Origin: Diplonema japonicum | Lineage: Eukaryota; Protista; Euglenozoa: Diplonemea | Direction: 5' to 3' | Assembly: GCA_964019335.1 (NCBI GenBank) | Contig: OZ025678.1 | Span: 248,001 to 312,000, forward strand | Length of the DNA stretch: 64,000 bases | In this document: positions 19,878 to 50,656 of the stretch, one piece after another | Layout of the letters: each line of letters opens with the position of its first letter | Position numbering within the stretch: position 1 is the first letter of the stretch | Translations under genes and position numbers: made by a program | The notes under the pieces: generated by a model | The model's input: only the letters and a program-made list of their open reading frames with translations | Told to the model about the DNA's origin: nothing | Database searches by the model: none

Positions 19878-20382
19878 GAGAAGTAAAAAATTTAAAAAAA
19901 AATTGTAAGTCCAACCCCCCCATTTTTTTTTTTTTTTTTTTTAGTGTTTTTTTTTTTTTTTTTTCCTATTTTCTCTCACATAAGTAGGAATTTTTACCCA
20001 CCCACCCCCTGCGGTTTTCTTTACTTGAAAAAAAAAAACTACAGAAAAAAAAAAAAAAAAAAAAGAACGACTTTTTTTTTCTCTCCGCTTTTTTTTGATG
20101 TTTTTTTTTTATGTGTTCCCTCATAAGTACGTAAACCATAAAAAGTTTCCCCCTCCTTTCGTTTTTTTTCTTTTTTTTTTTTCCTTTTCCGTTTTTTTCT
20201 TTTTTTTCCCCCCCTTTCCCCCACGTTTCCCATACTTTTTTTTCTTTTCCTTTTTCTCCCTCCTTGTTTCCTTTTTTTTTTTCTTTTCCTTCTTTTTTTC
20301 TTTTACTTCGTTTTTTTCTTTTCCTTCTTTTTCCTTCCAAAAGTATGGACACGACAAGGGGAAAAAAAAAGAAGAAACAAAA

Positions 20383-22569: not shown

Positions 22570-23434
22570 ATGATCGGTGTTATTTTCGGTAGTGCAATTC
22601 TGTGCCTGTTCCTGTGGACGATGGTGCTGAGGATGCGTATCAAGGCGCTTAACAAGGTTGCTGGGTACTGGTTCGGCTTAGTGACAGCATGCTGCATGCT
22701 GGGGGCGTTCTTGGTGGTCAAGACAAGCGCGGCCCTGCTGCCCAGGGGGATCACCGAAGTGGTGTCGTGCAGAACTGCAAAGATCGCCTTTGCCACTACA
22801 CTGTTTCTGAACCCTCAGATAAACCTGAGGCAGGAACTCGATTGGTCAAAACTCCCAGACAAGTGCATGCTGCTCCTGAACCACACATCATGGTTCGACT
22901 CGGTCGTCTTCACGGCTGTTGTTCCTCTCTCGTTCATTTCACACTTCAGGACGCTTCTCAAGGCCAGTTTAATGAATCTTCCTCTTGGTGGTGCTATCTT
23001 CAAGAATGCGGGTCATTACCCGGTTTACTTCATTAAAGACTGGGGTGTTGATAAGGAGAAGCAAGCTCCCGTTACCAAGAGGATGAACCAGTTCATCAAG
23101 GAGAGCGACCGTGCTGTGATTTCTTTCTACCCCGAGGGTGTCGTGAACAAGGAACCCGCTACCCTTCAGACCTTCCGTCGTGGGTCCTTCGCCACCCCCA
23201 TCGAGCACGACCTCCCCATTTATGCCTTCCTTGCGGTGGGGAATGATGTTACATGGCCTGCTGGAGGGTTCCCTGGGCAGCCTGCCGATATTGATTTGAA
23301 GCTTTTCGAGGTTGGAAAAAAAAAAAAAAAGGAAAAAAAAAAAAAAAAAAAAAGGTCACACCTGCGATGTCAAAGCTCTCCGAAGATTTGAGAACCCCCC
23401 AAGCCCTGTCCGAACACTGCAGGGATGTGATGCA

Positions 23435-28824: not shown

Positions 28825-30486
28825 TCTGCGAAGACCAACCACGTTCCGATCGCATTGGGCGTCTCGACGCTCGCGAAGCTAGACGGCTTCATAACCATGC
28901 TCTCCGACGACGGCCACCTCAGCTGCAACTACCTAGGTACAGACCCCGCCACACAACCCACACAACTGTTGGACACGGTATATCACATCAAAACCACAAA
29001 AAAAAAAAAAAAAAGGCCCGTGAGCTCGACTACGATGACATGGACGAGGAACACCGCCAACTGCAGCAACTCATCCGGCAAGCTGTGAACGCGGGAAAAT
29101 CAGAACCCGACGACCACGTCCAACTACAATACGAATGCCCATCACAGCTTGACGCAAACGCACCATGCGAGGCAGACACCTCAGGAACGAGTAAATTCTG
29201 CACTGTCCGCCTTTTCGTCTCATATACAGGGAAGGAAGACGTAGAAAACGCAATACTCACCATAAGCGTACCCCAACCGTTTGAACTAGCACAGAGCTCG
29301 ATTCTAATCGAGAGAATAGAAGGAGGAGGTGCCCCGCAAATGGTCCCGTTGACGTTCATGCTGAGCAATGATCCATCCGTTGCTTGTTTAACACCAACAT
29401 CTCTTCAAGCAGAGGTTATGTGTTGTTACAGCTCGCCTGCAGGCGAACCATTGACGTCGCGATGCTCCTTCTTCCTCCCGATGTCGTTGGCAGGCTGTGC
29501 CATACCACCTGTTAAAAACCCGAATTTTAAAATCACGCTGGAGACCAACCTTGCTCCACCTCCCTTGCAGGTTCTTTTCGACGACGTGATCGGGAATTCT
29601 GGAGAGGCCTCTGTCAACGTGTTCTCTTTCCAATATAACAACAGCAGTGACGTTACTATTTTGGTCTCGAAAAGCGCGAATCGATGCCGTATACAGTCTA
29701 GTCAGTTTGAAGCGTTGTGGCTTTTAATTGCGGAGCTGGTGCGAAGGATGAAAATCTACTACGCGTCGCAGGGCGGGGAGACGTTGAAGATAAAATACGC
29801 GGATTCGCTTCCGTTTCAGGATTATTTCCAAGTTGTTGATACGCATTTCAATGCGAGGATTCAACTGGCGGAGTCGCAGCAGAGGCTTTCCGAGCGGGCG
29901 CATCAGTTCAGGTCTATACAGAAGCGGTTGCTTGTGAGGTTTAAAGATAGAAACCCGTCGCCCTTGAACAATTTGGATAAGCTTTTTGAAGACACGTACC
30001 GGCAGCTGCTCGGGATATCTGAGGAGGTGGACCGGCACCAGCAGGAGATCGCTGTTGCGTCCAACGTCTTGGTGTGTGCTACGCATTTAATTCTGTTGTT
30101 GGTGCAGTACCGCTTCGACATGAAGAAGGACGATATCAAAATTTTCAAACATTATCTGTCGCCTGTCGTCGTCGATTCTCCCACTCAAGGATGGGAAGAG
30201 TGTACCGATGCTGCCATGACACATTTAGTATGTTTTTTTTTTGGGGGGGAGAAAAAAAAAAAAAGCTCCGCACCTCTCTCGCTAAAACGTATAAGGAAGC
30301 CATGTCCATGCCACAACCGTTGCAGGTTTGTGTTTTCGAGGGGAGAAAAAAAAAAGATTTTTTTTTTTTGTATAGGTACCGCCGGATACAAACAAATTGA
30401 AGAAGCATATTGCGCTGGTGTGCGATCGATTGGCGAAAGGGGGTTCTTTGAAGAATGAAAAGCCGCCTACGAAGGATCAAAAATAA
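27604..30486 (+). CDS. BBS9: BBSome subunit BBS9 (PTHB1)
   Basis: Starts MGSLFKARDWW; contains IQKRLLVRFKDRNPSPL and GWEE; ends LKKHIALVCDRLAKGG. Seven introns: 28303-28361, 28494-28550, 28626-28705, 28777-28823, 28978-29015, 30228-30265, 30326-30375. Confidence 0.93.
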
Positions 30487-32995: not shown

Positions 32996-34112
32996 ATGAG
33001 AAAATCGTATTTCATGGACAACAGGATAGTAAGGTACCGACCGGGGGAGAAGGGGGTTCTGTTCAAAAAGGGAGATGGTTCGGCCGCAAGGGTGCTGCAG
33101 GCCGAGCAGCCGAAGGAGGTCGGCAAGGCCATCAAAAACCTCAAGAGAAACGGCTTCGACGTCAAGGCAAAAACCTACCAAATGGGCCTCCACCTCGCAG
33201 GCAAGAACGGAAACGTTGTAGAATGGGGACGCGTTCTCTCCCTCATGCACACCGACCACATCAAACAACTCTCCACCGGGTGCTACAACGCCCTCATGGA
33301 ACTATGCATCGCAGCCTTCTGCTACAACCAGGTTTTTGACGTCCGTAACTTAATGGCTAAATACGACAGGATCCCAGACACGGTAACATACTTACTCATG
33401 TTGAAGTCGCTGTCAAAAATATCCGGTGACGCCACGCGTCTTGGCGATGTTGCAACTCAACACAAAGCCTTCACCAGAGCCGTGAAAATTCTGAACATCG
33501 TGGAGTCCAGCGGCGACATCGTCATCGACAAAAACTTCATCACCGTTATGATGCAATGTGCTGCTGCTGATCAAGCGAAAATAATTCTCAGATCCGCGCA
33601 GCTCAAAGGAATGCAGCCCGATAACATTTCATACAGTGTACTGTGCGGGCTTTACGCGCAAATCGGCGATGTTTCCAACGTGTTTCGTATAATTCACGAA
33701 ATCGTGAAATCGGGCTTGAAACCAGACACGATTACCTGGAACACTTGTTTGGATGCTTGTCGAAATAAAGGCGATCTTACTCTTCTTCACCAAACGCTGG
33801 CTTATATGAACGCGCATCGCGTTCCGTTGAGCACGGCGCACCTCACCATTGTCATCCAAGCCGTGACGCCCTTTGTTGCAAATGGGAACCCCCATGCGTT
33901 GCGTGCCGCTGTTATTTGTTTCGAGGCGCTTCGGTCTAAGAAAGTCCTTAACCCGAGGGTCACATCTCGTATGGCCTCTGTCCACGCGGCGCGGGGCCCC
34001 GAAGGGGAGAGCGACCTCAATGCGTTCGTCAAAGAATTCCCCACGTTCATCGCTTACGAAGAGCAACGAGGCATTGGCATGGGGTCGAGATGGTACAGAG
34101 AAGTTCGGGGAT

Positions 34113-34114
<2 letters not shown>
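32996..34114 (+). CDS. Pentatricopeptide repeat (PPR) protein
   Basis: 35-aa PPR-type units: PDTVTYLLMLKSL, QPDNISYSVLCGLYAQIGDVSNVFRIIHEI, KPDTITWNTCLDAC. Start could be ATG 32941 if the poly-A length is misassembled. Confidence 0.8.
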
Positions 34115-34146
<32 letters not shown>

Positions 34147-34298
34147 CCATTATATTTCGCTCAATATCCTCAAAAAAAAAAAAAAAAAAAAAAAGGTGCT
34201 GGGGAGGGGGGGGAAAAAAAAAGAAGAGAAAAAAAAATCGGGTAGAATTCAAATGATATAAAAAAAAAAAAAAAAGAAAAGAAAAAGAAATTTAAGTA

Positions 34299-37200
34299 AT
34301 GAAGTGGAAAATGCTGCAACAGACAAGATGCCTTTGGAAGCTCCACCAGCCGTCCCGTGCAGTTGCATTGGGGTACGAGCTCATCGAGTGGTGCTTCGTG
34401 GCATTAGTATTCGTGTACGCCCTGGCGATGATGGACAAGGAGAGAACGAACCTACGAAATTCCCCCGAAGAGCTGCCTTTCTACAGCAAATGGCCTCAAT
34501 ACGACGACGCAGAGGGTTACGGCGCCCCCGTGCACAATTTCACACTGGACGACATGGACGGTAAGGAAATCTGGTTCGCATCAGGATCCGATCTCCCGGA
34601 AAAATCGATCGACACGTTCATCGACGACTTCAGAACCCTGACAGGAATCCCAGAAAACCTCACAAGGCTGTGGAACAACACCGACGACATGCTAGATTAC
34701 CTGAACAACCCGAAAGATCTGACATCGTTCTCCTCATGGAGGCGATGGTACAATGTAGTCGGCCAAGGCATGGCAGCGATCATAGTGAATAATACCGATT
34801 ACACTCTGTACATTGCCAACTACCCGCGGCAGGACAAAATAATTTCTGTTCAAGGCTGGGAACAATCCCCATCAGTAGGCAACATGCGCTCCTCACGCCT
34901 CGCCAACATTCAAATCGCACTGGAGACTACATTCTCGCGAACATTTTACTCCATCACGACGGACTTGAGATTCAATTACACTCGGTACGACACCGCCAAT
35001 CCCCCGAACATAGAGGATATCGTGAACAGCAATGTTCTCATGACATCAACAGCATCGTCTATAGGCCTGTACGCGCTTGCCTTGTATCTTGTGCCGTTTT
35101 TGAGAATGGTCACCAGTCTGGCACGGTCGCGGCAGATGGGCATCAAATCGTTTTTGGAGGTGAACGGTGTCTCGCTGGGCGCGTACTATCTGTCCTTCAC
35201 CCTGATATCCGTGGTGCCCAGGCTTATCATGATTCTCGCTGTGTCTGCTGTGATGTCTACCATGCTTCTTCCTGACATCTCGATGTTGGGCTTCGCTTCA
35301 TTTTTGACAATGGCGTTGATCGCATTGGTACCCTTCGCATTATTTCTGTCCATTTTCTGCAGATCCATCATCAACACGTGGAGGTTCGCCGTTCTTGTGT
35401 ATCTTGCGACAGGGGGCGTCGGGGCTTTGAACGCGTCATGTTCGAAATCGAGTCTGGTTGACGGCGGGTGTTTTCACAATTGGGGCATCAGTGCCATATT
35501 CACTCCTGCTACATTCGTATCTGGTGTTACCATCTTCACCCATAAGCAAGTGGAGCATTGGAATCACGGTGTGTCCATAACCCATCACCCCTCGCTTGGT
35601 ACCATGTATGCAATGTTGCTTGTCAACACTGTGGTGTATTCCTTACTTGCCTTCTGGGCATCCGGTGTTTTCCTTGAAAAGCGACCCGTCTTCTTTCCCT
35701 TTTCCCGTTCCTTCTGGACGAGTGTCAAGCACATCTTCACCGAGTCCACCTCGTCGGGGATTACCGCGCAGAACGTTTCCGTTGTCATCGGCCAGAAGGT
35801 CATCCTGCGTGACATCAATCTGAGCACCCCGCAGGGCAGCACCCTCGCCCTCCTTGGGCACAATGGAGCGGGCAAGACGACCTTTTTGAAGGTTATCACC
35901 AACATGCTGAACTACAAAGGTGAGGTCCGTCTGTGTGGGCTTCCCATAGAAGAGGCTTGCCGACGCGGCTTTGTCGGGTACTGCCCCCAGGAAATCGTGC
36001 GAACTGACGCCACTGTCCTTGACCTCTTAGAGCTGGTCGCGTGCATCAAGGGGGTGCCCTTCAGAGAGACACGTGCGCATGCAGAACGCGCAGCTGCCAA
36101 TGTGGGTCTGTACGACCACCTCCACCGAGCACCAACCAGCCTCGCGCTGGGCAACAAGCGAAAACTCGGCGTTGCGCTTGCATTCCTTGGGAATCCTAGG
36201 ATCGTGATCCTCGACGAGCCCACTGCGGGGCTGGACTCCCGTTCCCGCAGGCAGGTGTGGGATCTGATCAGGCGGCACAAGAACGCAACGTGTGTGTTCA
36301 CAACACATCTTCTTGATGAAGCCTGTTTAGGGGACACGATCGCAATCATGCACGAGGGACGGCTCCCTGATGACTTCATCGGCTCGATGACAGATCTGAA
36401 GAAAAAGTTCAACTGCGGGCAGAGCTTGGACATCGTCAAGACGGGCGTCAACGTGTGCGACGACAAGATCATGAACGCGGTACGGCCGTACATCCCAGAG
36501 ACATACGACGGGTGCGTGAAGAGAAGTGGGAGAGGGCTGACCATACCACTACCGGATGAAGGCGGCATGCGACGGTACGTAGGGCTGTTGAAAACCTTGC
36601 AGGACAACGAGAAGTGCAAGGCGATGGGAGTGGAGTCCTTCTCGCTGAGAATGACAGGCCTGGAGGATGTTCTCGTCAAGTTATGCGATCCGCTGAGCGA
36701 GACAGTCGAGGTCGACGACGTGGGTTCCGACTTCGTCAACATCACGAAGATAGCATCGTTCAGCCACACCATATCGACGCCTCTCCTGGCACAGTACGGA
36801 CAGCTCCCGTCTCTCCTCTCCAGCCCTGCCGAGTCAGTCAACATCCCTATGCAAATGTGGATCATCCTGTACCACATGAAAGCGCGTGCCACATTCCGTT
36901 CTCTTCGTTTCTACTCTATACAACTCATCTTCCCTGTTGCCTTCATCATTCTGTCTATTTTGTACACTTCGTACGTCAGGTCCACTCAGAAGAACGAAGC
37001 AGAGAGCGTTGAGCTCAGCGCGGCTCGCCTTTCCGACGAGGCCACGTCGCAGATCTTTGTCCGTGGCCCCGGGGCAGAGGCCATGATGAATTTCACAACT
37101 CAGCACCCACTAGAATGGGGTGTGCAGATGGCGTTTTACAACAACCCTCTCTCGGACCTGTACATGAACTCTTCTTCTGTGACGCTTGATGCTGTGGGGG

Positions 37201-40200
37201 AGGTGCAGAAGGATATTGTCGAGGTGCGCACGTGGTTCAATGAAAGCGTGTCGACCAGCATTCCTGTCGTTATCAACTACTTCATGAACGCCATGCGCAT
37301 TGAGCAGGGTGCACCGAGCGTGGTGGGGACGCTGAAGTCGTTCCCAGTGTACACCTTTGCGAAGAAAACTTACGTCCATTTGTTCGGAGCATGCCTGTCC
37401 GTCTGCTTTGCAATTATCACAGCAGTCTTCGCAGGACGGCTCGTACAAGAGAGAAACAGTGGTGCCAGGAACCTCACCCAGCTGTGCGGGGTACACGACA
37501 CCACGTTCTACGTTGCATACGGGTTGGGGGACTGCGTCACAGCACTGCTGGCACAGTTGATCATAGTTGCTGTTTTCGGCATATGGTTGTCCTCTTACGG
37601 GTCAGAACTCTTCGGTCTTATCACCACTCTGTTGCTGTTGTACACACCAGCTATCCTTGCGATGAACTACACGCTTTCTTATGTGTTTAGCAAAGGCCTC
37701 AATGCCACTGTTTTCTGCACCATCTACCACATCGCCATCAGCAGCATGCTGCTTATCTCTCCCCACACCGGTTTCTCTTCAAGAAACATCTTCCGTATCC
37801 TATCTCCCCTCGCTGCGATGCTGGAGGGTATTCTTTACTTCCTCAATCTCGGCGGCCACGCGTCACACGACGCTCTTGTGTCCCCTACCGCGAGCAAGGA
37901 GTCGCTGATCTCGGATACGTACTTCACCATCTTGTACCAACTGATCAGTTGGTCAGTTCTGCTCACTCTTGCAGAGTCTGGATACAAGATCAAAAACCTG
38001 ATTAAGAAGATGTTCCCACGGCCTACGGGGTACTACGAGAACGAAGCAGCACTTGCCGGTGTCACGCAAAGCAAGAATGTTCGTGACGAGATGAACGAGG
38101 TGGTGAACTCGTGGGGCGCTGACGACGAAACACTCTACGTCAAGCAGCTGCGCAAAGTGTACAAAAATCGGATCGCTGTGTCGGGGATGTACTTAAAGCT
38201 GACACCTGGCACCTGCTTTGGGTTGCTGTCGCCCAGTGGGGCAGGGAAGACCACAGCAGTGACGATGATGGCGGGGCTGATGGCACCGTCGCAGGGTGAA
38301 GTCACTGTACGGGGTCTCTCAAATCTGTACCCGTTGCAGCTGAAAAAGCTCCAGAAGCTGGTTGGGTACCTGCCGCAGACGGACCCGCTCCCCCCTGGGC
38401 TTACTGTGTTCGAAGTTGTCGACTTCTACGCGAGGCTGAAGGGCGTACCGGGCACCTCCAAACAAAGCATTTGCAACCTTCTCAAGACGGTCGGGTTGGA
38501 AGAATACATCGATAGAACTTGCGGTGCGCTCAGTGGTGGGAACAAACGTCTTGTTGCCTTGCTGCTCGCGTTGCTCGGGTCTCCACCGATACTTCTGCTT
38601 GACGAACCTACGGCGGCAATGGACCCTGCTACACGCCAGAAGGCGTGGTGGCTGATTAATACAAGAACCAACCAGCAGCACGAGCGGCCTATTGTGGTGC
38701 TCACCACAAACTCGCTCAAAGAAGCAGACACTGTGTGCAACAAAGTGGGTGTGATGATCCAAGGGCATCTATCGGAGTTGGGTAACCCGAAAGAGCTCAA
38801 GGAGCAGCATTCTTCAGGGTATTTCCTGCCTGTGTTGATGACCAACGACAAGTCGAGCAAGGCGTTGACGGAGGCCCTTACGGCAAAAATACCAGGCACA
38901 AAAACATTGGAAGCGCACGGGAGGAAGCTGGAGTTCCAGTTCCCAAGCGACGTGTGCCTGCCAGATGTGATTGATGTCTTGGAGAACGAGGACCACGTCA
39001 GCGAGTACTCCATCTCGAAGATGATGTTTGAACAGACATACCTGCATGCTGTCGAGCAACAGAGAGCAGCCAAACTACGTGGTGGGCTTGCAGATGAACT
39101 TGTGCCCCCTCTAAGGGTGTGCATCTTGATTGTAGGTTCGCGTGGCGATGTGCAGCCGTTCCTTGCGTTCAGTGAGAGGCTGCAGGCAGCAGGCCACGTC
39201 GTCCGCATCGCCACACATGAGTGCTTTCGGTCGTTTGTGACAAGCCACGGGGTCGACTTCAGCCCTATCGGCGGTGACCCCGAGAAGCTGATGCAGTTCA
39301 TGGTGGAGCACCCATCGATGATCACTACCAACTTGGAGGAGATTCGTGCAAAGCGTTCGATGATGAGTGAGATCTTCTCTGGGTGCTGGAATGCCGCGTC
39401 CACCTGGAAACCTGATGTCCTCATCGCTAACCCGCCGACACAGGTGCACGTCCACATCGCAGAGGCGCTGCACATCCCACTCCAGATACACTTCACCATG
39501 CCATGGTCACCTACAAAGGCGTACCTCCACCCCTTGGCAGTTGTCAGCGCCCTTGGGAACGAGCAGTCCTACGGCATTGTGGAGGACCTCATGTGGCTGG
39601 GCATGTCGGACATCATCAACAACTTCAGGGCGAGCATTGGGCTGCGGAAGATCAAACATGGTTCTGGCCTCGCCAACTCTCTCAAAGTGCCGCACATCTA
39701 CTGCGTCAGCGAGAGCCTCGTCCCGAAGCCCACCGACTGGGCGGGGCATATATCGGTGTCGGGGTTCTGGTTCCTGGACTCCCTTGCACAGGACTACGAC
39801 CCCCCGCAGGATTTGGCGGCGTTCTTGGCAGCCGGCCCGCCACCTATTTATATCGGCTTTGGGTCTATTGTTGTGCCCAGTATCAACGCGCTTGAGAAGG
39901 CAGTGTTCGGTGCTTTGCGGCGAGCCAACGATGAGAGCATTGTACCTGTACGGGCGATCGTGAGCCCTGGGTGGGCGAAACTTGGGATGAACCTCCCGCT
40001 GCCGGAGTACGTGTTTTTATTGGATAAGTGCCCGCACGACTGGTTGTTCCCACGCTGCGCTGCTGTGGTGCACCACGGCGGTGCCGGGACGACAGCGGCG
40101 GGGCTGCGCGCGGGGAAGCCGACGGTCGTGATCCCATTTTTCGGAGACCAACCGTTTTGGGGAAAGTGCTGCGAGCGGCAAAACGTGGGCCCCACCCCGA

Positions 40201-41027
40201 TACCTTACAAACAACTGACAGCAAAGAGCTTGGCGAGGGCTCTGATGGAAGCCCTGCAGCCGCGCATGGTCCAGGCGGCAAAGGAGCTCAGCGTCATGAT
40301 CAATTCAGAAGCCGGAGTCGAGACGGGACTTCGTGCATTTTACAACTATCTTCCACTCGAACCAAGCGGGTCATGGCGCGTGGAGTGCGTTGAAAACCAG
40401 CGGTGGTTCCCTGTAATAGGGTGGAGCGCCACCCTGGCAGTAGGGGACCCATCACCCTACAGCGACGAGACCGGATCCATGAGCTGTGACAGAATGGAAT
40501 ACCCATGCCCGGAAGGCTGGCAGTGGGAAGACGAATGGAGGGTTTCAAAGGTAAATGGCAGCGACCCCGATGGCTTCAGGTACGCAACTTCTTTTAAAGG
40601 CCCTTGGCGGCAGGTCCCTTCGTCCACAGATGTTGTGAGACGCAGATTATGGTTCAGAAGGAGGACCAGGACAGGTGTCAAAGAGAATGTTGGTGACGAA
40701 GTGGAAAGATTGCGAAAAGAAAATAAAGACCTCCAAACCAGGCTTGATGCACAAGCACACTACATCCAGCGCCTCATTAGCGGTATGGGGTTGGAAGCAC
40801 CTCCAAAGGAGGCTTCCCTCACAGCAAGCAGCACTCCTGAGGACCCAGACAACACGCTGAGCACTGCAGTCCACAAAGGTTGTACGGATGTGGCTCAGCT
40901 TTTATTAGAATACAGGGATTACTCGGATCCCTTCAGCACTCGGGATAGTGAAATTTTGGCAGTGTCCAGTGCTGGAAGGATATCAGAAATGGATATGGAA
41001 GATGTTAGTATAGAGTTTGCGGATTGA
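34299..41027 (+). CDS. Full-length ABCA-type transporter fused to a sterol 3-beta-glucosyltransferase-like (GT1) domain, a DysF domain and a coiled coil
   Basis: One uninterrupted 2242-aa ORF: TMD-NBD1 (GHNGAGKTT, ILDEPTAGLD), TMD-NBD2 (SGAGKTT, LSGGNKR, LLDEPTAAMD). Then GSRGDVQPF..IYIGFGS..PHDWLF..HHGGAGTTAAGL..PFFGDQPFWG, then ENQRW..GW..EGWQWEDEW..DGFRYA..VRRRLWFRRR. Confidence 0.9.
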   Translation: MKWKMLQQTRCLWKLHQPSRAVALGYELIEWCFVALVFVYALAMMDKERTNLRNSPEELPFYSKWPQYDDAEGYGAPVHNFTLDDMDGKEIWFASGSDLPEKSIDTFIDDFRTLTGIPENLTRLWNNTDDMLDYLNNPKDLTSFSSWRRWYNVVGQGMAAIIVNNTDYTLYIANYPRQDKIISVQGWEQSPSVGNMRSSRLANIQIALETTFSRTFYSITTDLRFNYTRYDTANPPNIEDIVNSNVLMTSTASSIGLYALALYLVPFLRMVTSLARSRQMGIKSFLEVNGVSLGAYYLSFTLISVVPRLIMILAVSAVMSTMLLPDISMLGFASFLTMALIALVPFALFLSIFCRSIINTWRFAVLVYLATGGVGALNASCSKSSLVDGGCFHNWGISAIFTPATFVSGVTIFTHKQVEHWNHGVSITHHPSLGTMYAMLLVNTVVYSLLAFWASGVFLEKRPVFFPFSRSFWTSVKHIFTESTSSGITAQNVSVVIGQKVILRDINLSTPQGSTLALLGHNGAGKTTFLKVITNMLNYKGEVRLCGLPIEEACRRGFVGYCPQEIVRTDATVLDLLELVACIKGVPFRETRAHAERAAANVGLYDHLHRAPTSLALGNKRKLGVALAFLGNPRIVILDEPTAGLDSRSRRQVWDLIRRHKNATCVFTTHLLDEACLGDTIAIMHEGRLPDDFIGSMTDLKKKFNCGQSLDIVKTGVNVCDDKIMNAVRPYIPETYDGCVKRSGRGLTIPLPDEGGMRRYVGLLKTLQDNEKCKAMGVESFSLRMTGLEDVLVKLCDPLSETVEVDDVGSDFVNITKIASFSHTISTPLLAQYGQLPSLLSSPAESVNIPMQMWIILYHMKARATFRSLRFYSIQLIFPVAFIILSILYTSYVRSTQKNEAESVELSAARLSDEATSQIFVRGPGAEAMMNFTTQHPLEWGVQMAFYNNPLSDLYMNSSSVTLDAVGEVQKDIVEVRTWFNESVSTSIPVVINYFMNAMRIEQGAPSVVGTLKSFPVYTFAKKTYVHLFGACLSVCFAIITAVFAGRLVQERNSGARNLTQLCGVHDTTFYVAYGLGDCVTALLAQLIIVAVFGIWLSSYGSELFGLITTLLLLYTPAILAMNYTLSYVFSKGLNATVFCTIYHIAISSMLLISPHTGFSSRNIFRILSPLAAMLEGILYFLNLGGHASHDALVSPTASKESLISDTYFTILYQLISWSVLLTLAESGYKIKNLIKKMFPRPTGYYENEAALAGVTQSKNVRDEMNEVVNSWGADDETLYVKQLRKVYKNRIAVSGMYLKLTPGTCFGLLSPSGAGKTTAVTMMAGLMAPSQGEVTVRGLSNLYPLQLKKLQKLVGYLPQTDPLPPGLTVFEVVDFYARLKGVPGTSKQSICNLLKTVGLEEYIDRTCGALSGGNKRLVALLLALLGSPPILLLDEPTAAMDPATRQKAWWLINTRTNQQHERPIVVLTTNSLKEADTVCNKVGVMIQGHLSELGNPKELKEQHSSGYFLPVLMTNDKSSKALTEALTAKIPGTKTLEAHGRKLEFQFPSDVCLPDVIDVLENEDHVSEYSISKMMFEQTYLHAVEQQRAAKLRGGLADELVPPLRVCILIVGSRGDVQPFLAFSERLQAAGHVVRIATHECFRSFVTSHGVDFSPIGGDPEKLMQFMVEHPSMITTNLEEIRAKRSMMSEIFSGCWNAASTWKPDVLIANPPTQVHVHIAEALHIPLQIHFTMPWSPTKAYLHPLAVVSALGNEQSYGIVEDLMWLGMSDIINNFRASIGLRKIKHGSGLANSLKVPHIYCVSESLVPKPTDWAGHISVSGFWFLDSLAQDYDPPQDLAAFLAAGPPPIYIGFGSIVVPSINALEKAVFGALRRANDESIVPVRAIVSPGWAKLGMNLPLPEYVFLLDKCPHDWLFPRCAAVVHHGGAGTTAAGLRAGKPTVVIPFFGDQPFWGKCCERQNVGPTPIPYKQLTAKSLARALMEALQPRMVQAAKELSVMINSEAGVETGLRAFYNYLPLEPSGSWRVECVENQRWFPVIGWSATLAVGDPSPYSDETGSMSCDRMEYPCPEGWQWEDEWRVSKVNGSDPDGFRYATSFKGPWRQVPSSTDVVRRRLWFRRRTRTGVKENVGDEVERLRKENKDLQTRLDAQAHYIQRLISGMGLEAPPKEASLTASSTPEDPDNTLSTAVHKGCTDVAQLLLEYRDYSDPFSTRDSEILAVSSAGRISEMDMEDVSIEFAD

Positions 41028-41187
41028 ACTTTTTTTTTCTTCTTCTTTTTTTCTTGATTTTCTCAACACTAGCTTCTAAATACGGGAGGGGGGGGGGAAT
41101 GGATCAGATTCGCTGGAGGAAAATTAGATCTAAACAAGGAAGAGGTGGGAAAAAAAAAAAAAAAAAGAAAAAAAAAAAACTATTTAA

Positions 41188-42512
41188 CCCATAACACTCC
41201 AAGGCGCAAATATTTGTCGTTTTGAAAAATTGTTTTTTTTTCTCTGTGTACTTTTTCGTCCCCACGACCCCCTGGATCTCCAAGAACGACTATAGTGAGG
41301 AGTTATTTTCAACTGCATTTCATGCTGCGCTGCATCACTTTACCTTGTTGTCCACCCACCAAGTGGGTCCCAAATCCGAGTAGATAGGCTAAAAACGCAA
41401 AATAACGGGTGTGCATACTGTGCCCAAATTGTTCCCAAAAAACGCAAAGGTAAAGCCAAAACAGCTACAGACGAGGTCCAACCTTCATGGGTAAGGGAGT
41501 CGGTACCCATAGAGACCATAAAATAGGCCAGTGGGGAGAAAAAAAGCTGTCCTGTGGTACGCAGAAACCTGACGACGCAAAATGGTTATTCCTTCGGTTT
41601 TTTTATAAGAAGCTCACAGACGTCATCCAAGAAGAGACAAACAAGCAAAAGGACACTGAGATTGATAAAATTTCGACCCAGGACTCCACCGCTTACTCGG
41701 ATTGAGCATTGCGATGGGTTTACGGCGTGCCCAGAATCAGCAGTCGTATTGGTCCACAGGACCCATGAAAATCCCCCTTTTCAGTATCACGATGCCCAGG
41801 AGACGCTACTGGGAAATCAAAAGTACCCAGCCTCCACTTCACTCACACAGAAGAGTCAAACGGTGATGTGTTGTGAAGATACGAGGGTTTCTGGACAGAA
41901 TTGGTGACAAGGTGGGCAAAAGCAGCAGTGCCAGGAAAACATTTAAGCATTGACGAGACACTCGTACCTTCACGGGGCAATTGGGGGGCTGCGGGTCTAC
42001 TGTCCTCTCAAGCATAAAAGATATGGCATAAAAATCTACTGCCTAAACTGCACGAGCACGGGTTATCTTTTGCGTTTTCACATCCACGCCACCAAAACCG
42101 AGGGGCACGCACTTGAAGATTTCAGTGTTGTGGAAAAGGCGGTGCTGGGGTTAACAGAGCCTTTCCGGGGAAATGACAACACGGTAGTTTGCGATAGCTA
42201 CTTTTCGACTGTGGGTCTGGCCGAAGCCCTGTGAAAAAACTTTGAGGGGCTTGCATTTCGTTGGGGTGTTGCGGACTCTTCTGGTGGGCCCTAGAAGTGA
42301 CAATAGTTAACTGCCATGCACTTCAAATAAAATATGGTTCAGGGATGCCAAAGAGATACACAACCCTGGCTGCTTTTAAAGAGCGCTTTCGAGCGTTGCA
42401 TGGACCCGTTTTACCTGCAAACGGGGGTTAAATGCTGCCATTTTTCACCTCAAATTATGAAAAGGAGCAAAAAAGGGACCCCTATGTAGATAGGGCCCTG
42501 GAGTGTTATGGG
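41188..42512 (+). mobile_element. Decayed piggyBac-superfamily DNA transposon
   Basis: 14-bp perfect TIR CCCATAACACTCCA (41188-41201) / TGGAGTGTTATGGG (42499-42512). TTAA on the left (41184-41187) and (T)TTAA on the right. Frameshifted transposase remnants SIDETLVPSRG, PLKHKRYGIKIY..TGY, VVCDSYFSTVGLAEAL. Confidence 0.9.
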
Positions 42513-42594
42513 TTTAAAAAAAAAAAAAAGAAATGTGACATTGCTTCGTGTTTCCCTTCTTCCTTTCTTTTTCTCTCTTTTTCCCACGTCTCCT

Positions 42595-42645
<51 letters not shown>

Positions 42646-43368
42646 CTCTAACTTTACCTCACTCGAAAATTTTACGTGTTATGTACTACATTTCATATTT
42701 ACCAAATGGATTTTTTTTTTAATTATTTGAATGCAAGAATTTTGACGCCTTCTTGGTAGGGGAACAGGGAAAAAAAAAAGAAGACAGTAAGGCTCTCCCT
42801 ATGCATAGTTTAAATAACCATGTTTAAAGGAAAAAAAAGGGGGACAGGAAAGGCTGAAACTGACTCTCGATGTGGGCCTTCTCTTCCCCCCCCAATCAAA
42901 AATTTTGAATTTTTCAGATTTATATTCTTGCACCAAAAAAAAAAAAATGTCAGCTTTTATGCGCTACAAAAAAAAACCCCTCCTAAGAAAAAAGATCCTT
43001 TTAAAGACCGGCTGTGCAACAAAAACAAAGAAAAAAAAAAACTTGCCTCGTTCTTCTTTTTTTTTTCGGTTGCTAGCACTTCTCCCCCCCCCCCCCCCCC
43101 CCCATCATAGTGAATATTTCGTTATTCTTGGGGTGGGGAAAAAAACTTTTTTTTTTCCCCTTCGCCTTTTTTCCGTCTTATTTCCTATCTAGTCGAAAAA
43201 AAAAAAAAAAAAAAGTGTTGCAAAGAGAAGGGAAGCGATTTCTTTTTTTGTTTTGGTTTTTTTTTTTTCTTTTTTTTTTTCCCTTCTTTTTTTTTCTCTC
43301 CAGAACAAAAGAAAAAAAAAAAAACACACGAAATCAAAGGGAAGAAGTGAAGGAAGAAAAAAAAAAAA

Positions 43369-44029
43369 ATGGGGTGCACAGAATCGAAGGAGGCGCCAAA
43401 AAGCCAAGCACCTACACAAAAAGCACCAGTAGAAAACGCAAGTTCGAAACAGGTTTGGCAGAACGGGGAGGTGTTCCCAAGCCAACTTGTGGGACACCGC
43501 ATCCAAAGGCCAGACAGAAAATTAGAAGGTGTAACACTTGTGGACTGTTTGGTAGACAACGCAAGAGACTTCGAGTATGGAATTTATTATTATTATTATT
43601 ATTATTATTTTTTTTTCTCCCTCCAGCCTGGAAAGATGCACGCTCCGAAACTGTAAACTGATAAATTGCCACTTGAAAGATTGCACTATAGAAGCAGGCA
43701 CGGAGGTGAACCGCTGTGTGGTTAAAGGGGGTACCTCTGTGGTATTTCTTTCTTTTTTTTTTTTATATTCAGAAAGAAAAAAAAAAGTACATCCCCCCCC
43801 CCCACTCTAGGACGCGACGCTTACCTCGGGAACTGAAGTTTCTGAGAATTGTGAAATAAACAGGTGTATGGTGACAGACCGCTGCACTATTAGAAACTGC
43901 ACCATTGGCCGGGATATCACCACCACTGGATCGATGTTCTACTCTTGTAACGGGAACCCTCAGCCACCCCCAAATGACGTGCACTGCAACGGCTGCATTT
44001 GGGGAGAACAGGCGGTGCAGTCCGTATAA
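43369..44029 (+). CDS. Small dually acylated-type (MGC) protein with Cys-periodic beta-helix-like repeats
   Basis: Starts MGCTESK. Introns 43575-43626 and 43742-43810 give LERCTLRNCKLINCHLKDCTIE..NRCVV..ENCEINRCMVTDRCTIRNCTIG..QSV*. Confidence 0.7.
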
Positions 44030-48366: not shown

Positions 48367-49996
48367 ATGGATCCATCGATACTTCAGAAGTACGAGCAAG
48401 GGGAACGCCTCGGGTCCGGCAGACAGGGGTCGGTGTACAAGGTGGTGAGGAGGGTGGATGGAGGTATCTTTGCGATGAAGGTGTTGGAGGCGCCCGCGGA
48501 AGAGGTGCACAGGAAGAACGTGGAGGAGGTGCAGCACATGCTGAAGCTGAAACACAAGAACCTTGTTCCCTGCCTTGACTTCTTCGAGACGACAAAGCAG
48601 CTGGCAAGGGAATCCCTTGGGAAGGTGTGGCGGGTTCACATCGTGATGCCCCTGTACGGAAAAGGGGACCTCTGCTCATGCGTCCAAAAGGAGGGACCCC
48701 TCTCTCCGGAGAGGGCGGACAGGCTCTTGCGGGAGATGGGAGGGGTCCTTCAGTACATTCACAGTGAGGGCTTCATCCACAGGGACGTGAAACCCCAAAA
48801 CATCATGGTGTCGGGGAAGGGACCTCTTTCTGCGGCCAGTGTTACTTGCGGCGGGGAAGGGGAGGCAGAGTTCATCCTGGCCGACCTGGGACTGTCGAAG
48901 GAAGTGTCCTCCGATGGGGTAGCGAACTCCTTTGCAGGCACACCAACTTACATGGCACCCGACTTCTTCAACGAAAAGGACGGCTACACCAACAAAGTAG
49001 ACATGTGGGCCCTCGGGGTGACTGTGTGTAACGTGGTGCTCCAAGAAGACCTGAGGAATCTCTTTCTGAAGTACCTGCATTCTAACCGGGAGCTTGTGAT
49101 GGGGGAGCTTCAGACCCACCTCCCCCCTGCCCTCTTGGGGGTTGTGTCCCGCCTCCTCTCCACCGACCCTTTGGAACGCCCCAGTGCACTGGAGATGCTG
49201 CAGACGAGACCCCCTGGGATGGTTCCTCAGCCAACTGGAATTGTTCTTCTTGCTGTTGGGAGTGTTGGTGGAGAAGAGAGGAAAAGGAAGCTCTGCGTGG
49301 CAGTGGGGGCAGCAAAGGCCTTCTCTTCGATGGGGCAGGAGCTCCTCAGGGTTCGCAGGTTGGAGGTCTTCGACAAGGACTTCGGGGAGTTCGTGGAGGA
49401 GGACGACGGGGACATCGTGTTCCAGGACAAGGGACGGGTCCGTGTCGTGTTTGAAGCACCGCTCCCAACCACCGCTGCTACTTCAACCACAGCTACTTCT
49501 TCAACCACCAGTGACAGCAGCAGCAACATGCACCCACCTGCTGCGAACAACACCACCCTCACAAAAGAGGAGGAGAGGCTTGCCTTGGCCAGTGCTGTTT
49601 CAAAAGGCGACCTTGAGGAGATGAGGCATCTTGTTCTGGAGCGGGGTGTTGACCCTGGTGCAACGGACAGCGATGGTTTCACAGCCCTGCACTATGCAGC
49701 TCGCGGAAACAACTGTGTCGAGGCTGTGGCTGCTCTCGTCTGTTCTTACGACCAGGACCCTGGTGTCAGAAGCAACTATGGTTGGACTCCGGTCCATGAA
49801 GCAGCAGAGAATGGAAGTCTCGAGACAGTTAAATATCTTGTTGAGACTCGCAGTCTCGGCGTAGGTGTCAAAAGCAACGATGGTCGGACACCGCTTCACC
49901 AAGCAGCACTGAAGGGCCACCTCGAGACAGTTAAATATTTTGTTGAAATCAGGAGAGGTGCGGCATCACGCACTCTTTCCGTCTCATACACAAAGA

Positions 49997-50057
<61 letters not shown>

Positions 50058-50168
50058 TGTTGAAACTCGCGGTCAAGACGCTGGTGTCAAATGCAACTAC
50101 GGTCGGACACCGCTTAATCTAGCAGCACTGAACGGTTACCTCGAGACAACTAAATATCTTGTTGAAAC
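48367..50168 (+). CDS. Ser/Thr protein kinase + ankyrin repeats, copy 1; 5' part, interrupted by two retroelement insertions
   Basis: GSGRQG, AMK, HRDVKPQN, DLG, GTPTYMAPD, DMWALG; ankyrin units GxTPLHxAA..GHLETVKYLVE. Confidence 0.85.
49949..50055 (+). mobile_element. Severely 5'-truncated copy (about 45 nt + poly-A) of the adjacent non-LTR retrotransposon
   Basis: CAGGAGAGGTGCGGCATCACGCACTCTTTCCGTCTCATACAC is identical to 57500-57541, followed by poly-A. Flanked by TTGTTGAAA on both sides (49940-49948, 50057-50065). Confidence 0.9.
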
Positions 50169-50656
50169 AAACTGTACTTTGTACTGTACTTTACTGTACT
50201 GTACTTTATTGGCTGCTCCCCGTGGCCAATAAGGTTCCTACAGGGAGTCAACGGGGCTGTCTTCCCTTATTACACACCTCGCCCCCCACACACACAAAAA
50301 AAAAAAAAGAAAGAATATTGTAATTGTAATAGTTGTTTGCTGGTGACCGGTGAACGGTGCTGGTGGTGTTGGCTGAGCGGGCTGGTTTAGCTGATTGGTT
50401 GAATTGAATTGATTTGAGTTGAATTGAGTTGTGTTGTCTGCTGGTGAGTGGTGATTGGTGCTGGTGTTGGTAGTATTGGTTGAGCTGGTTGGTTTGATTG
50501 CAAGAATTGAACAGAAGTGTTGGAGAACGCTAGATCCCTCCTTCCTTCCCTTCCTCTTTCATTCCTTCCCTTCCTTCCTATTCTACTGCTGCATTTCCTC
50601 GTCATCATCATCATCATCATCATCATTTATTCTCGTCTTCTTCCGCCACTGTCAGT

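What the first reader, a model, noticed from the sequence alone, without database searches (positions are those of the whole stretch)
34299..41027. ABCA lipid exporter fused to a sterol-glucosyltransferase-like enzyme and a DysF domain: candidate make-and-export glycolipid machine
Seen: one intronless 2242-aa ORF with a complete TMD-NBD-TMD-NBD ABCA, then a full two-lobed GT1 enzyme (about 39111-40350), a DysF module (about 40375-40670) and a coiled coil, with no stop or homopolymer spacer between them. Known: ABCA proteins move sterols and lipids; GSRGDVQP/HHGGAGTT/PFFGDQ are hallmarks of UGT80/Atg26-type sterol glucosyltransferases; DysF occurs in ferlins, Pex30-family proteins and TECPR1 as a membrane/lipid-binding module. 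Inference: the cytosolic tail glycosylates a sterol or lipophilic xenobiotic and hands it to the fused transporter, possibly at a membrane contact site. I do not know this architecture from characterised proteins.
Basis: partly seen in the sequence, partly recalled or inferred. Interest (0 to 1): 0.88.

Follow-up and report, generated by a model that had tools for sequence, protein, structure and literature searches.

The report
ABCA transporter fused to lipid glucosyltransferase
The marine protist Diplonema japonicum encodes one 2242-residue protein that joins a complete ABCA lipid transporter to a sterol-glucosyltransferase-type enzyme and a lipid-binding DysF domain. The fusion is conserved across diplonemids, I found no paper describing it, and it suggests a built-in "make a glycolipid and move it" machine, though that function is untested.

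Summary
Window 34299-41027 (+) is one uninterrupted 2242-aa ORF: ABCA transporter (TMD-NBD-TMD-NBD-R domain), a short length-conserved linker, a UGT51/UGT80-type GT-B glucosyltransferase, a DysF domain and a helical tail.

The genome is Diplonema japonicum. It has three such fusion genes: this one, one on contig C30 and one on C62. Fusion proteins also occur in transcriptomes of six other named diplonemids, in two ancient clades. The scan had already noted the two paralogs on other DNA (s1-856834, s1-861412).

Additional results:
- The GT-DysF module is older than the fusion. It exists stand-alone, often with a C2 domain, in euglenids and Amoebozoa.
- The ABCA and GT trees are congruent, which fits a single early fusion.
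- All 10 fusions analysed have one degenerate ATP site, and it is the opposite site in the two clades. None of 31 unfused ABCAs has one.
- The GT catalytic motifs are invariant.

No paper found describes the architecture. The make-and-move mechanism is plausible but untested, and direct RNA reads could not be obtained. The call is a new variant of known kinds, with moderately high interest.

The parts
34299..41027 (+). Single intronless ORF of 2242 aa (stop at 41025-41027): ABCA-GT-DysF fusion gene, clade A paralog of Diplonema japonicum
   Evidence: the exact protein is on record in EukProt
34359..35672 (+). TMD1: TM1 (aa 21-39), exoplasmic domain ECD1 (aa ~40-256, five N-x-S/T sequons), TM2-6 (aa 257-458)
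   Evidence: hydropathy scan and sequons; no Pfam hit for this half
35763..36449 (+). NBD1 (aa 489-717): canonical Walker A (GHNGAGKT), Walker B (LDEP) and H-loop His, but a degenerate signature LALGN (nt 36141-36155)
36906..37943 (+). TMD2: TM7 (aa 871-889), ECD2 (aa ~890-1027, three sequons), TM8-12
   Evidence: Pfam ABC2_membrane_3 aa 870-1180; hydropathy; ABCA1 alignment aa 1028-1583
38127..38807 (+). NBD2 (aa 1277-1503): deviant Walker A SPSGAGKT (nt 38229-38252), H-loop His replaced by Asn (nt 38703-38714), canonical signature LSGGN
   Evidence: AF2 and Foldseek to ABCA4/1/3/7
38814..39017 (+). ABCA-type regulatory (R) domain after NBD2 (aa 1506-1573)
   Evidence: Pfam R1_ABCA1 weak here (18.5 bits), 38.8 bits in fragment P0125; Foldseek aligns NBD2+R (~340 columns) to ABCA4/1/3/7
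39042..39119 (+). Linker from the R domain to the GT (aa ~1582-1607) with conserved VPPLR. Spacing from the R-domain FEQxY motif to GxRGD is 31-33 aa in clade A and 26-28 aa in clade B
   Evidence: AF2 pLDDT 59-68 here
39120..40364 (+). GT-B glucosyltransferase of UGT51/UGT80 (CAZy GT1) type (aa 1608-2022) with invariant G[ST]RGDVQP, HHGGAGT and PFFGDQxFWG
   Evidence: UGT51 E 1e-78; TMt 0.85-0.88, 36-37% identity
40377..40670 (+). DysF domain (aa 2027-2124): ENQRW start, W-x-W-x3-W, and an Arg stack VRRRLWFRRR
   Evidence: TECPR1 8p5p E 6e-10; AF2 long beta-hairpin at model residues E776-787 and E863-874
40686..40787 (+). Conserved helical, coiled-coil-like segment (aa ~2130-2163, E-x-E-x-LR-x-EN...)
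   Evidence: present in all 11 fusion proteins; AF2 helix at aa 2131-2139 with low pLDDT; coiled-coil pairing not tested
40788..41024 (+). Variable, low-conservation C-terminal tail (aa 2164-2242)
   Evidence: tail length after the DysF varies from 34 to 275 aa among orthologs

Best explanation
This is a real single gene of Diplonema japonicum. It encodes a full-size ABCA (type V) lipid transporter. A length-conserved linker of about 26-31 residues follows its cytosolic C-terminal R domain. After the linker come a UGT51/UGT80-type UDP-sugar:lipid (most likely sterol) glucosyltransferase, a DysF membrane-lipid-binding domain and a short helical segment.

Most likely mechanism:
- The tail sits on the cytosolic face of the same membrane, held there by the DysF domain.
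- It uses UDP-glucose to glucosylate a sterol or similar hydroxylated lipid in the cytosolic leaflet beside the transporter.
- The ABCA moiety, driven by its single competent ATP site, moves that glycolipid to the other leaflet or out of the membrane.

Shown here: the architecture, its conservation and ancestry, intact catalytic motifs, one degenerate ATP site, and sterol-pathway genes in the genome. Inferred: the acceptor, the sugar, the direction of transport and the coupling itself.
For: One ORF with all domains.

Support for the junction:
- Contigs from three independent studies cross it with 0 differences.
- The exact 2242-aa protein is in EukProt.
- The C30 paralog is 100% identical to a complete Trinity ORF of D. 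japonicum.

Conservation:
- Fusion proteins occur in Namystynia, Rhynchopus, Artemidia, D. ambulator, Flectonema and Lacrimia, plus unnamed ENA assemblies.
- In a search of 1.84 billion representatives, no protein other than these fusions and one fragment matched both the NBD2 and the GT part.
- The GT is the best conserved domain (62-69% identity in clade A), the catalytic motifs are invariant, and the spacings from R domain to GT and from GT to DysF are fixed.

Domain identities:
- GT matches UGT51 by sequence (E 1e-78) and by fold (TMt 0.85-0.88).
- The ABCA part matches ABCA1/3/4/7 at E 1e-82 to 1e-90, against 1e-28 for the next ABC class.
- DysF domains bind lipids: sphingomyelin in TECPR1 (PMC10476172) and phosphatidic acid in Pex30 (PMC12101077, PMC12101078).

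Genomic context:
- The only close UGT51-like genes in the genome are the three fused ones.
- The genome encodes an oxidosqualene-cyclase-like protein and a sterol C24-methyltransferase.
- The ABCA and GT trees are congruent.
Against: - The runs laid were contigs of unknown kind, probably DNA.
- Stand-alone GT-DysF(-C2) proteins work without an ABCA in euglenids and Amoebozoa. The ABCA could therefore only replace C2 as a membrane anchor.
- The AF2 linker has low confidence (pLDDT 59-68) and pTM is 0.68, so no fixed enzyme-transporter interface is predicted.
- The transmembrane domains are very diverged (18-41% identity among the fusions, 25-31% to other ABCAs), so substrate class cannot be read from homology.
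- The DysF lacks TECPR1's K152-K153-W154 sphingomyelin site.
- No canonical squalene epoxidase was found.
Confidence: 0.5

Rival explanations
1. Anchor-only fusion. The ABCA and the glucosyltransferase act on unrelated substrates. Fusion merely tethers the GT-DysF enzyme to a particular membrane, replacing the C2 (or PH/GRAM) targeting domain of its stand-alone relatives, or lets the tail regulate the transporter.
For: The closest stand-alone relatives carry GT-DysF-C2, and the C2 is missing from the fusions. The linker is predicted flexible. Fungal UGT51/Atg26 uses PH/GRAM domains for targeting (general knowledge).
Against: Linker length has stayed fixed across two ancient clades while the rest of the protein varies by 800 aa. 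Every close GT copy in the genome is fused. The ATP-site degeneration is specific to the fused ABCAs, 10 of 10 against 0 of 31, which suggests the transporter itself changed with the fusion.
Confidence: 0.2
2. Reverse order. The ABCA extracts or flips the acceptor (for example ingested or outer-leaflet sterol) towards the cytosolic face, as the importer ABCA4 does, and feeds it to the tethered GT. The resulting glucoside stays inside the cell for storage, signalling or detoxification.
For: ABCA4 shows that ABCA proteins can run inward (general knowledge; ABCA4 is among the best structural matches). Diplonemids are phagotrophs or osmotrophs that take up foreign lipids (general knowledge).
Against: Most ABCAs, including the best sequence match ABCA1, are exporters (general knowledge). 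Nothing in the sequence indicates direction.
Confidence: 0.17
3. Xenobiotic conjugate pump. The GT glycosylates lipophilic foreign compounds (phase II) and the transporter expels the conjugates (phase III).
For: UGT51-family and GT1 enzymes are promiscuous towards hydrophobic aglycones. Structural neighbours include antibiotic and flavonoid glycosyltransferases.
Against: Conjugate export is typically done by ABCC and ABCG transporters, not ABCA (general knowledge). The nearest enzyme by far is the sterol glucosyltransferase, at E 1e-78 against 1e-26 for the next group.
Confidence: 0.08
4. Artefact. Either an assembly chimera, or two cistrons that are separated at the RNA level by trans-splicing and polyadenylation between NBD2 and the GT.
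For: No direct RNA reads over the junction could be obtained here.
Against: Contigs of three studies span 36000-41025 without a difference. The exact full-length protein is in the EukProt source, and the C30 paralog matches a complete Trinity ORF there. The frame stays open in 11 proteins at 18-69% identity per domain. An upstream mRNA ending at the junction would lack a stop codon. The ORF has none of the homopolymer tracts that mark intergenic DNA here.
Confidence: 0.03

Closest known systems
Human ABCA1, ABCA3, ABCA4 and ABCA7 (solved full-size ABCA lipid transporters)
   Same: Same TMD-NBD-TMD-NBD order. Exoplasmic domains lie between TM1-2 and TM7-8. There is an ABC2_membrane_3-type TMD and an R domain after NBD2. 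Best PDB sequence matches are E 1e-82 to 1e-90, and Foldseek aligns NBD2+R at 30-34% identity.
   Different: Only 25-31% identity overall. The ECDs are short (~215 and ~140 aa). One composite ATP site is degenerate, whereas 31 unfused ABCAs have both sites canonical. A roughly 660-aa enzyme tail follows the R domain.
Saccharomyces cerevisiae UGT51/Atg26 sterol 3-beta-glucosyltransferase (PDB 5GL5, 5XVM); UGT80 family, CAZy GT1
   Same: GT-B fold with the GSRGDVQP, HHGGxGTT and PFFGDQ motifs. E 1e-78, 36-37% identity, TMt 0.85-0.88, rmsd 2.3-3.2 A.
   Different: There are no PH/GRAM targeting domains. The catalytic domain is C-terminal to an ABC transporter and is followed by a DysF domain. The acceptor is untested.
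Uncharacterised stand-alone GT-DysF(-C2) proteins of euglenids (Rhabdomonas, Ploeotia, Entosiphon), Amoebozoa (Physarum, Luapelamoeba, Ceratiomyxa, Soliformovum, Paramoeba), Chloroparvula and Salpingoeca
   Same: Same GT plus DysF module, 42-54% identical to the window's tail. They fall in the same half of the GT tree (33 rows, UFboot 88 / SH-aLRT 92), apart from most fungal and oomycete enzymes.
   Different: They are 590-1140 aa soluble proteins, often with a C2 domain and never with an ABC transporter. The fusion lacks the C2.
DysF domains of TECPR1 (8P5P), dysferlin, myoferlin and Pex30
   Same: Sequence match E 6e-10 to TECPR1 N'DysF. The Trp/Arg stacking core is kept: W-x-W-x3-W, and Arg at the positions of R159, R161, R165 and R167 (PMC10476172). 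These domains bind membrane lipids (PMC10476172, PMC12101077).
   Different: TECPR1's sphingomyelin-site residues K152-K153-W154 align with P-S-S, so the lipid specificity is unknown. W138 is Phe in the diplonemid copies.
Functional analogies recalled from general knowledge, not tested here: ABCA12 (glucosylceramide loading of lamellar bodies), peptidase-containing ABC exporters (PCAT), and fungal glycolipid gene clusters pairing a GT1 enzyme with an exporter
   Same: An ABC transporter handling a glycolipid; an enzyme domain fused to an ABC exporter that processes what it exports; a GT and an exporter working as a pair.
   Different: None has a glycosyltransferase covalently fused to a eukaryotic ABCA. 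In the fungal clusters the partners are separate genes.

Membership tests
ABCA subfamily of ABC transporters | Full-size TMD-NBD-TMD-NBD in one chain | tested here: met
   Pfam ABC_tran x2 and ABC2_membrane_3; 6+6 hydrophobic-segment pattern
ABCA subfamily of ABC transporters | Large exoplasmic domain between TM1-TM2 and between TM7-TM8 | tested here: met
   Gaps of aa 40-256 and aa 890-1027 between hydrophobic segments, carrying 5 and 3 N-glycosylation sequons. Topology is inferred, not measured.
ABCA subfamily of ABC transporters | Closest relatives are ABCAs, well separated from other ABC classes | tested here: met
   PDB: ABCA1/3/4/7 at E 1e-82 to 1e-90, next class at 1e-28. Database hits are named ABCA1/ABCA3-like.
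ABCA subfamily of ABC transporters | Regulatory (R) domain following the NBD | tested here: met
   R1_ABCA1 hit at aa 1506-1573 is weak in this copy (18.5 bits against 27) but 38.8 bits in P0125. Foldseek aligns about 340 columns of NBD2+R to ABCA4/1/3/7.
UGT51/UGT80 sterol glucosyltransferases (CAZy GT1) | GT-B two-lobe fold with the family's N-lobe GSRGDVQP motif and C-lobe HHGGxGTT / PFFGDQ nucleotide-sugar motifs | tested here: met
   these columns are invariant in the 46-sequence alignment A1
UGT51/UGT80 sterol glucosyltransferases (CAZy GT1) | Transfers glucose from UDP-glucose to the 3-beta-OH of sterols | not testable with these tools
   Only homology (E 1e-78 to UGT51) and the presence of OSC-like and sterol methyltransferase genes in the genome
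DysF (dysferlin/peroxin) domain | Sequence similarity to known DysF domains, including the Trp/Arg stacking core | tested here: met
   TECPR1 8p5p E 6e-10, dysferlin 2.5e-5, myoferlin. The stack residues align (PMC10476172).
DysF (dysferlin/peroxin) domain | Pfam PF06398 above the gathering score | tested here: not met
   20.5 bits against 26.8 in this copy. It is met in the euglenid relatives (29.9-49.1 bits) and is listed in the precomputed annotations for orthologs P0005, P0014, P0031, P0037 and P0049. PF06398 models the whole Pex24p protein, so a sub-threshold score here is not disqualifying.
DysF (dysferlin/peroxin) domain | Sphingomyelin-binding site of TECPR1 N'DysF (K152, K153, W154) | tested here: not met
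   These residues align with P-S-S. This is a TECPR1-specific feature, not a defining feature of DysF.

The most novel reading that the evidence does not exclude
The protein is a true coupled synthase-translocase. The tethered enzyme makes steryl (or other lipid) glucoside at the cytosolic leaflet, and the same polypeptide's ABCA moiety flops or extrudes it using one catalytic and one regulatory ATP site. I know of no other eukaryotic ABC transporter that carries the enzyme making its own substrate. It would also be a Rosetta-stone hint that ABCA transporters and stand-alone GT-DysF-C2 enzymes cooperate in other eukaryotes.
Probability: 0.35. Interest if true: 0.8.

Novelty: new variant of a known kind. 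Interest (0 to 1): 0.66.

Why it matters
ABCA transporters are central to sterol and lipid traffic, yet their physiological substrates are often uncertain. A natural fusion to a lipid glucosyltransferase links ABCA function to steryl or lipid glucosides and gives a direct, testable hypothesis.

Diplonemids are among the most abundant and diverse heterotrophic protists of the ocean, and to my knowledge Paradiplonema papillatum is genetically tractable, so the hypothesis can be tested in vivo.

The two paralog clades have inactivated opposite ATP sites. This is a natural experiment on functional asymmetry in ABC transporters, in a subfamily where all 31 unfused members compared here have both sites canonical.

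The stand-alone GT-DysF-C2 family seen in euglenids and Amoebozoa is itself uncharacterised.

Tried and rejected
- **RNA evidence.** The look-up of sequencing runs listed no run on record as RNA. The four runs laid were Logan contigs of unknown kind, totalling 61-66 Mb, close to the genome size. Their ends at about 34262 and about 41025-41092 coincide with homopolymer tracts, so they say nothing about transcript ends.
- **The look-up of encoding contigs.** The species and gene neighbourhood of ENA proteins P0004, P0008 and P0121 remain unknown.
- **Metagenome scan with the junction peptide.** It found only four GT-only loci and no fusion. The exact-peptide patterns make this a weak search.
- **Subcellular proteomics of P. 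papillatum (PMC12697944).** The held supplements do not contain the terms glucosyltransferase, ABCA or sterol.
- **Literature.** Three searches returned no description of the fusion.
- **Pfam on TMD1.** No hit for the first transmembrane half.
- **GT tree.** The GT tree alone does not resolve whether the two fusion clades are sisters (UFboot 35, SH-aLRT 6). The ABCA tree joins them (SH-aLRT 100), but it is a quick LG+G4 tree with long branches.
- **C62 paralog.** It has an intron, so it was analysed exon by exon. The joined protein was not built or searched.
- **Rejected readings.** Assembly chimera, two cistrons, and bacterial contamination. The neighbours are eukaryotic genes (BBS9/PTHB1, PPR, kinase-ankyrin) on the same strand.

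Full report
**1. Observation**

Window 34299-41027 (+) is one ATG-to-stop ORF of 2242 codons.

Pfam finds two ABC_tran domains, ABC2_membrane_3 (aa 870-1180), a weak ABCA1-type R domain (aa 1506-1573), Glyco_transf_28 (aa 1608-1742, E 6e-23) and EryCIII-like_C (aa 1901-1993). The tail alone gives a sub-threshold PF06398 match at tail residues 28-120 (E 2.7e-4, 20.5 bits against a cut-off of 26.8).

Sequence comparison with solved structures settles the identity of the tail domains:
- The GT matches yeast UGT51 sterol 3-beta-glucosyltransferase (5xvm, 5gl5) at E 1e-78 over its whole catalytic domain.
- The next segment matches the N-terminal DysF of TECPR1 (8p5p; E 9e-9 in the tail search, 6e-10 alone), dysferlin and myoferlin.

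The ABCA part matches ABCA1, ABCA3, ABCA4 and ABCA7 at E 1e-82 to 1e-90. The next best ABC class is at 1e-28.

A hydropathy scan gives the ABCA pattern: TM1, a gap of about 215 aa with five N-x-S/T sequons, five hydrophobic segments, NBD1, TM7, a gap of about 140 aa with three sequons, then further hydrophobic segments. There is no transmembrane-like segment in the tail beyond the buried beta-strands.

The ORF has no homopolymer of 7 or more bases. The flanking intergenic DNA has 31 T, 23 A and 16 A just upstream and 10 G, 17 A and 12 A just downstream.

**2. Organism and reality of the junction**

A paralog on contig C30 (L013:3490-9978:-, 2163 aa) is 100% identical over its full length to EukProt EP01064_Diplonema_japonicum_P006544, a Trinity transcript with a complete ORF. 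The assembly size (62.5 Mb, 132 contigs) fits the published D. japonicum YPF1604 genome of 62.3 Mb (PMC13598402).

The window's own 2242-aa protein is found by exact look-up with source "eukprot". This suggests that a de novo transcript encodes the whole fusion, because the named D. japonicum entry there is a Trinity ORF.

Logan contigs of three separate studies each cover 36000-41025 (40981 in one of them) in a single piece with zero differences (records 9, 17, 25). These runs are of unknown kind and are probably DNA. Their contig ends coincide with the homopolymer tracts, so they support the assembly, not the transcript.

No RNA run could be laid, which is the main gap in the evidence. The evolutionary argument is strong, however. 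The frame stays open across the junction in 11 proteins whose domains are only 18-69% identical. An mRNA ending between NBD2 and the GT would have no stop codon.

**3. Distribution**

Searching long proteins with the tail region found the same architecture in several diplonemids:
- Namystynia karyoxenos
- Rhynchopus humris
- Artemidia motanka
- Diplonema ambulator
- Flectonema neradi
- Lacrimia lanifica
- three unnamed ENA proteins

An exhaustive HMMER search of 1.84 billion representatives used aa 1251-2242 (NBD2 through the tail) as the query. No protein other than these fusions matched both the NBD2 and the GT part, apart from one 675-aa fragment with the junction (P0125). All other top hits matched either the GT or NBD2 alone. 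A two-domain protein would outscore single-domain hits, so the fusion appears restricted to diplonemids in that library.

D. japonicum itself has three copies:
- The window copy on C31.
- The C30 copy, 42% identical over its full length.
- The C62 copy.

The C62 copy is the ortholog of D. ambulator P0031 (61-63% identity). It contains one short GT..AG intron of about 45 nt, holding an A18 run, inside the GT domain. I analysed it exon by exon and did not build the joined protein.

Apart from a distant 473-aa GT1 on C35 (30% identity over the C-lobe only), the genome has no stand-alone relative of this enzyme.

**4. Ancestry**

The closest non-fused relatives of the tail are 590-1140-aa proteins with GT plus DysF, often followed by a C2 domain. 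They come from:
- euglenids (Rhabdomonas, Ploeotia, Entosiphon)
- Amoebozoa (Physarum, Luapelamoeba, Ceratiomyxa, Soliformovum, Paramoeba)
- Chloroparvula
- Salpingoeca

The GT-DysF module is therefore older than the fusion, and the fusion lacks the C2.

The careful GT tree (52 rows, 432 columns) gives these supports, as UFboot/SH-aLRT:
- Fusion clade A: 100/99. Members are the two D. japonicum copies, P0004, P0008, Rhynchopus and Namystynia.
- Fusion clade B: 100/100. Members are Artemidia, D. ambulator, Flectonema and Lacrimia.
- Clades A and B as sisters: only 35/6.
- The wider group also holding two Paramoeba-transcriptome proteins: 84/83.

In a quick LG+G4 tree of the ABCA moieties against 31 unfused ABCAs, clades A and B form one clade (SH-aLRT 100). 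The internal branching matches the GT tree, with a hemistasiid basal in each clade and the C31 and C30 copies as sisters. Long-branch attraction cannot be excluded for that node.

Each clade contains both hemistasiids and diplonemids, and the junction has the same layout in both. The simplest history is one fusion before the divergence of the sampled diplonemids, followed by an early duplication and a later one in Diplonema.

**5. Constraint**

| Domain | Identity to the window copy, clade A | Clade B |
|---|---|---|
| GT | 62-69% | 46-52% |
| DysF | 53-66% | 40-43% |
| NBDs | 50-61% | 34-38% |
| TMDs | 25-41% | 18-21% |

The motifs G[ST]RGDVQP, HHGGAGT and PFFGDQxFWG are invariant (invariant columns in A1).

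Spacing is nearly fixed although total length ranges from 2163 to 2964 aa and the C-terminal tails from 34 to 275 aa:
- From the last R-domain motif to GxRGD: 31-33 aa in clade A, 26-28 aa in clade B.
- From FFGDQxFWG to ENQR: 75-82 aa.

**6.

In clade A, including the window, one composite site is canonical and the other is not.
- Canonical: NBD1 has canonical Walker A, Walker B and H-loop, and NBD2 has a canonical LSGG signature.
- NBD2 Walker A begins with Ser (SPSGAGKT), and in Rhynchopus the Lys is also lost.
- The NBD2 H-loop His is N, C or G in several members (N in the window).
- The NBD2 Walker B Glu is N or M in two lineages.
- The NBD1 signature is LALG, LGTG, VSLG or LPIA instead of LSGG.

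In clade B the pattern is mirrored:
- NBD1 Walker A has a 2-residue deletion.
- The NBD1 H-loop is S or K in three of four members.
- The NBD2 signature is LPAS, LTPS, LSTS or LNES.
- NBD2 Walker A, Walker B and H-loop are canonical.

In the same alignment all 31 unfused ABCAs have canonical Walker A, signature and Walker B at both sites. So 10 of 10 fusions, against 0 of 31 controls, have one degenerate composite site, and the two clades degenerated opposite sites. By analogy with asymmetric ABC transporters (general knowledge), one site probably hydrolyses ATP and the other binds it or regulates.

**7. Structure**

AlphaFold2 on aa 1251-2140, with a 46-sequence alignment, gave mean pLDDT 89.8 and pTM 0.68. 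Confidence was low only at the very ends and in the R-to-GT linker (pLDDT 59-68).

Foldseek placed the GT on UGT51 (TMt 0.85-0.88, rmsd 2.3-3.2 A, 36-37% identity). It placed NBD2 plus the R domain on ABCA4, ABCA1, ABCA3 and ABCA7.

The DysF part shows the long beta-hairpin described for TECPR1's DysF. The Trp/Arg stack is conserved: W-x-W-x3-W, and Arg at the positions of R159, R161, R165 and R167. TECPR1's sphingomyelin-site residues K152-K153-W154 align with P-S-S (PMC10476172). The domain is therefore probably a lipid or membrane binder, as in TECPR1 and Pex30 (PMC12101077, PMC12101078), but its partner lipid is unknown.

**8. Mechanism**

NBDs and R domains of ABCAs are cytosolic, so the tail is cytosolic, where UDP-glucose is available. 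The genome encodes an oxidosqualene-cyclase-like protein and a sterol C24-methyltransferase, so a sterol acceptor is plausible. A canonical squalene epoxidase was not found.

My best reading (confidence about 0.5) is a make-and-move unit. The DysF domain holds the GT on the bilayer, the GT glucosylates a sterol or similar lipid next to the transporter, and the ABCA moves the product.

The rivals are:
- Anchor only, with the ABCA replacing C2 (0.2).
- Reverse order, with the ABCA feeding the acceptor to the GT (0.17).
- A xenobiotic conjugate pump (0.08).
- An artefact or two mRNAs (0.03).

None of the functional steps is shown by my data.

**9. Novelty**

Each domain belongs to a known family (see the membership table). 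The combination was not found in the literature searched and appears restricted to diplonemids.

The scan had already flagged the two paralogs on other contigs of this genome (s1-856834, with a follow-up reaching the same reading, and s1-861412). I verified the first directly and the second exon by exon.

I rate this a new variant of known kinds. The interest lies in the enzyme-transporter coupling and the reciprocal ATP-site degeneration.

**10. Limits**

- The single read-laying run (5901 letters) returned contigs only.

Noticed in passing
window 41122-41900: The DNA just downstream of the gene is covered by many short contigs at 4 to 100 times the gene's depth (164-1849 against 16-45), with many variant positions, in all three D. 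japonicum run sets. It looks like a dispersed multi-copy repeat.
   Followed up: no
window 34116-34275 and 41030-41180; also 42500-43800: Intergenic regions are packed with long homopolymers (31 T, 23 A, 16 A, 46 T, 20 C and others). The 6.7-kb ORF has none of 7 or more bases. De Bruijn contigs of public runs break exactly at these tracts.
   Followed up: partly
G000:C62, L014 about 6144-6190 (minus strand): The clade-B paralog of the fusion gene carries a short GT..AG intron of about 45 nt, containing an A18 run, inside the GT domain. The window copy and the C30 copy are intronless.
   Followed up: partly
whole genome G000 (C3:306765-307757, C4:23327-23512): An oxidosqualene-cyclase-like gene and a sterol C24-methyltransferase gene are present, but no canonical squalene epoxidase (PF08491) was detected. 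The genome may use an alternative epoxidase, or the search may have missed it.
   Followed up: no
window 29040-30458, 32996-34114, 48367-50232, 20095-22197, 22570-23391: All sizeable ORFs lie on the + strand, like a polycistronic unit. The neighbours are a PTHB1/BBS9 homolog, a PPR protein, a kinase with ankyrin repeats, a Casc1_N protein and an acyltransferase. None has an obvious link to the fusion gene.
   Followed up: partly
run X1 (organism A) on window 36934-38870 and 40039-40269: A run from a different labelled organism holds low-depth contigs 90-99% identical to parts of the gene. This points to a close relative or another strain that carries the same gene. No piece crosses the junction.
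   Followed up: no
G000:C35 (L005:673-2091): This is a stand-alone 473-aa GT1 protein (Glyco_transf_28 plus EryCIII-like_C), only 30% identical to the fusion's C-lobe. It is the only other enzyme of this superfamily found in the genome.
   Followed up: partly
proteins P0002, P0003, P0010 (oomycetes): Very long oomycete proteins (1900-3700 aa) carry UGT51-like domains together with PH, zinc-finger or chloride-channel Pfam hits. P0010 has several separate GT matches. These may be other GT fusions or merged gene models.
   Followed up: no
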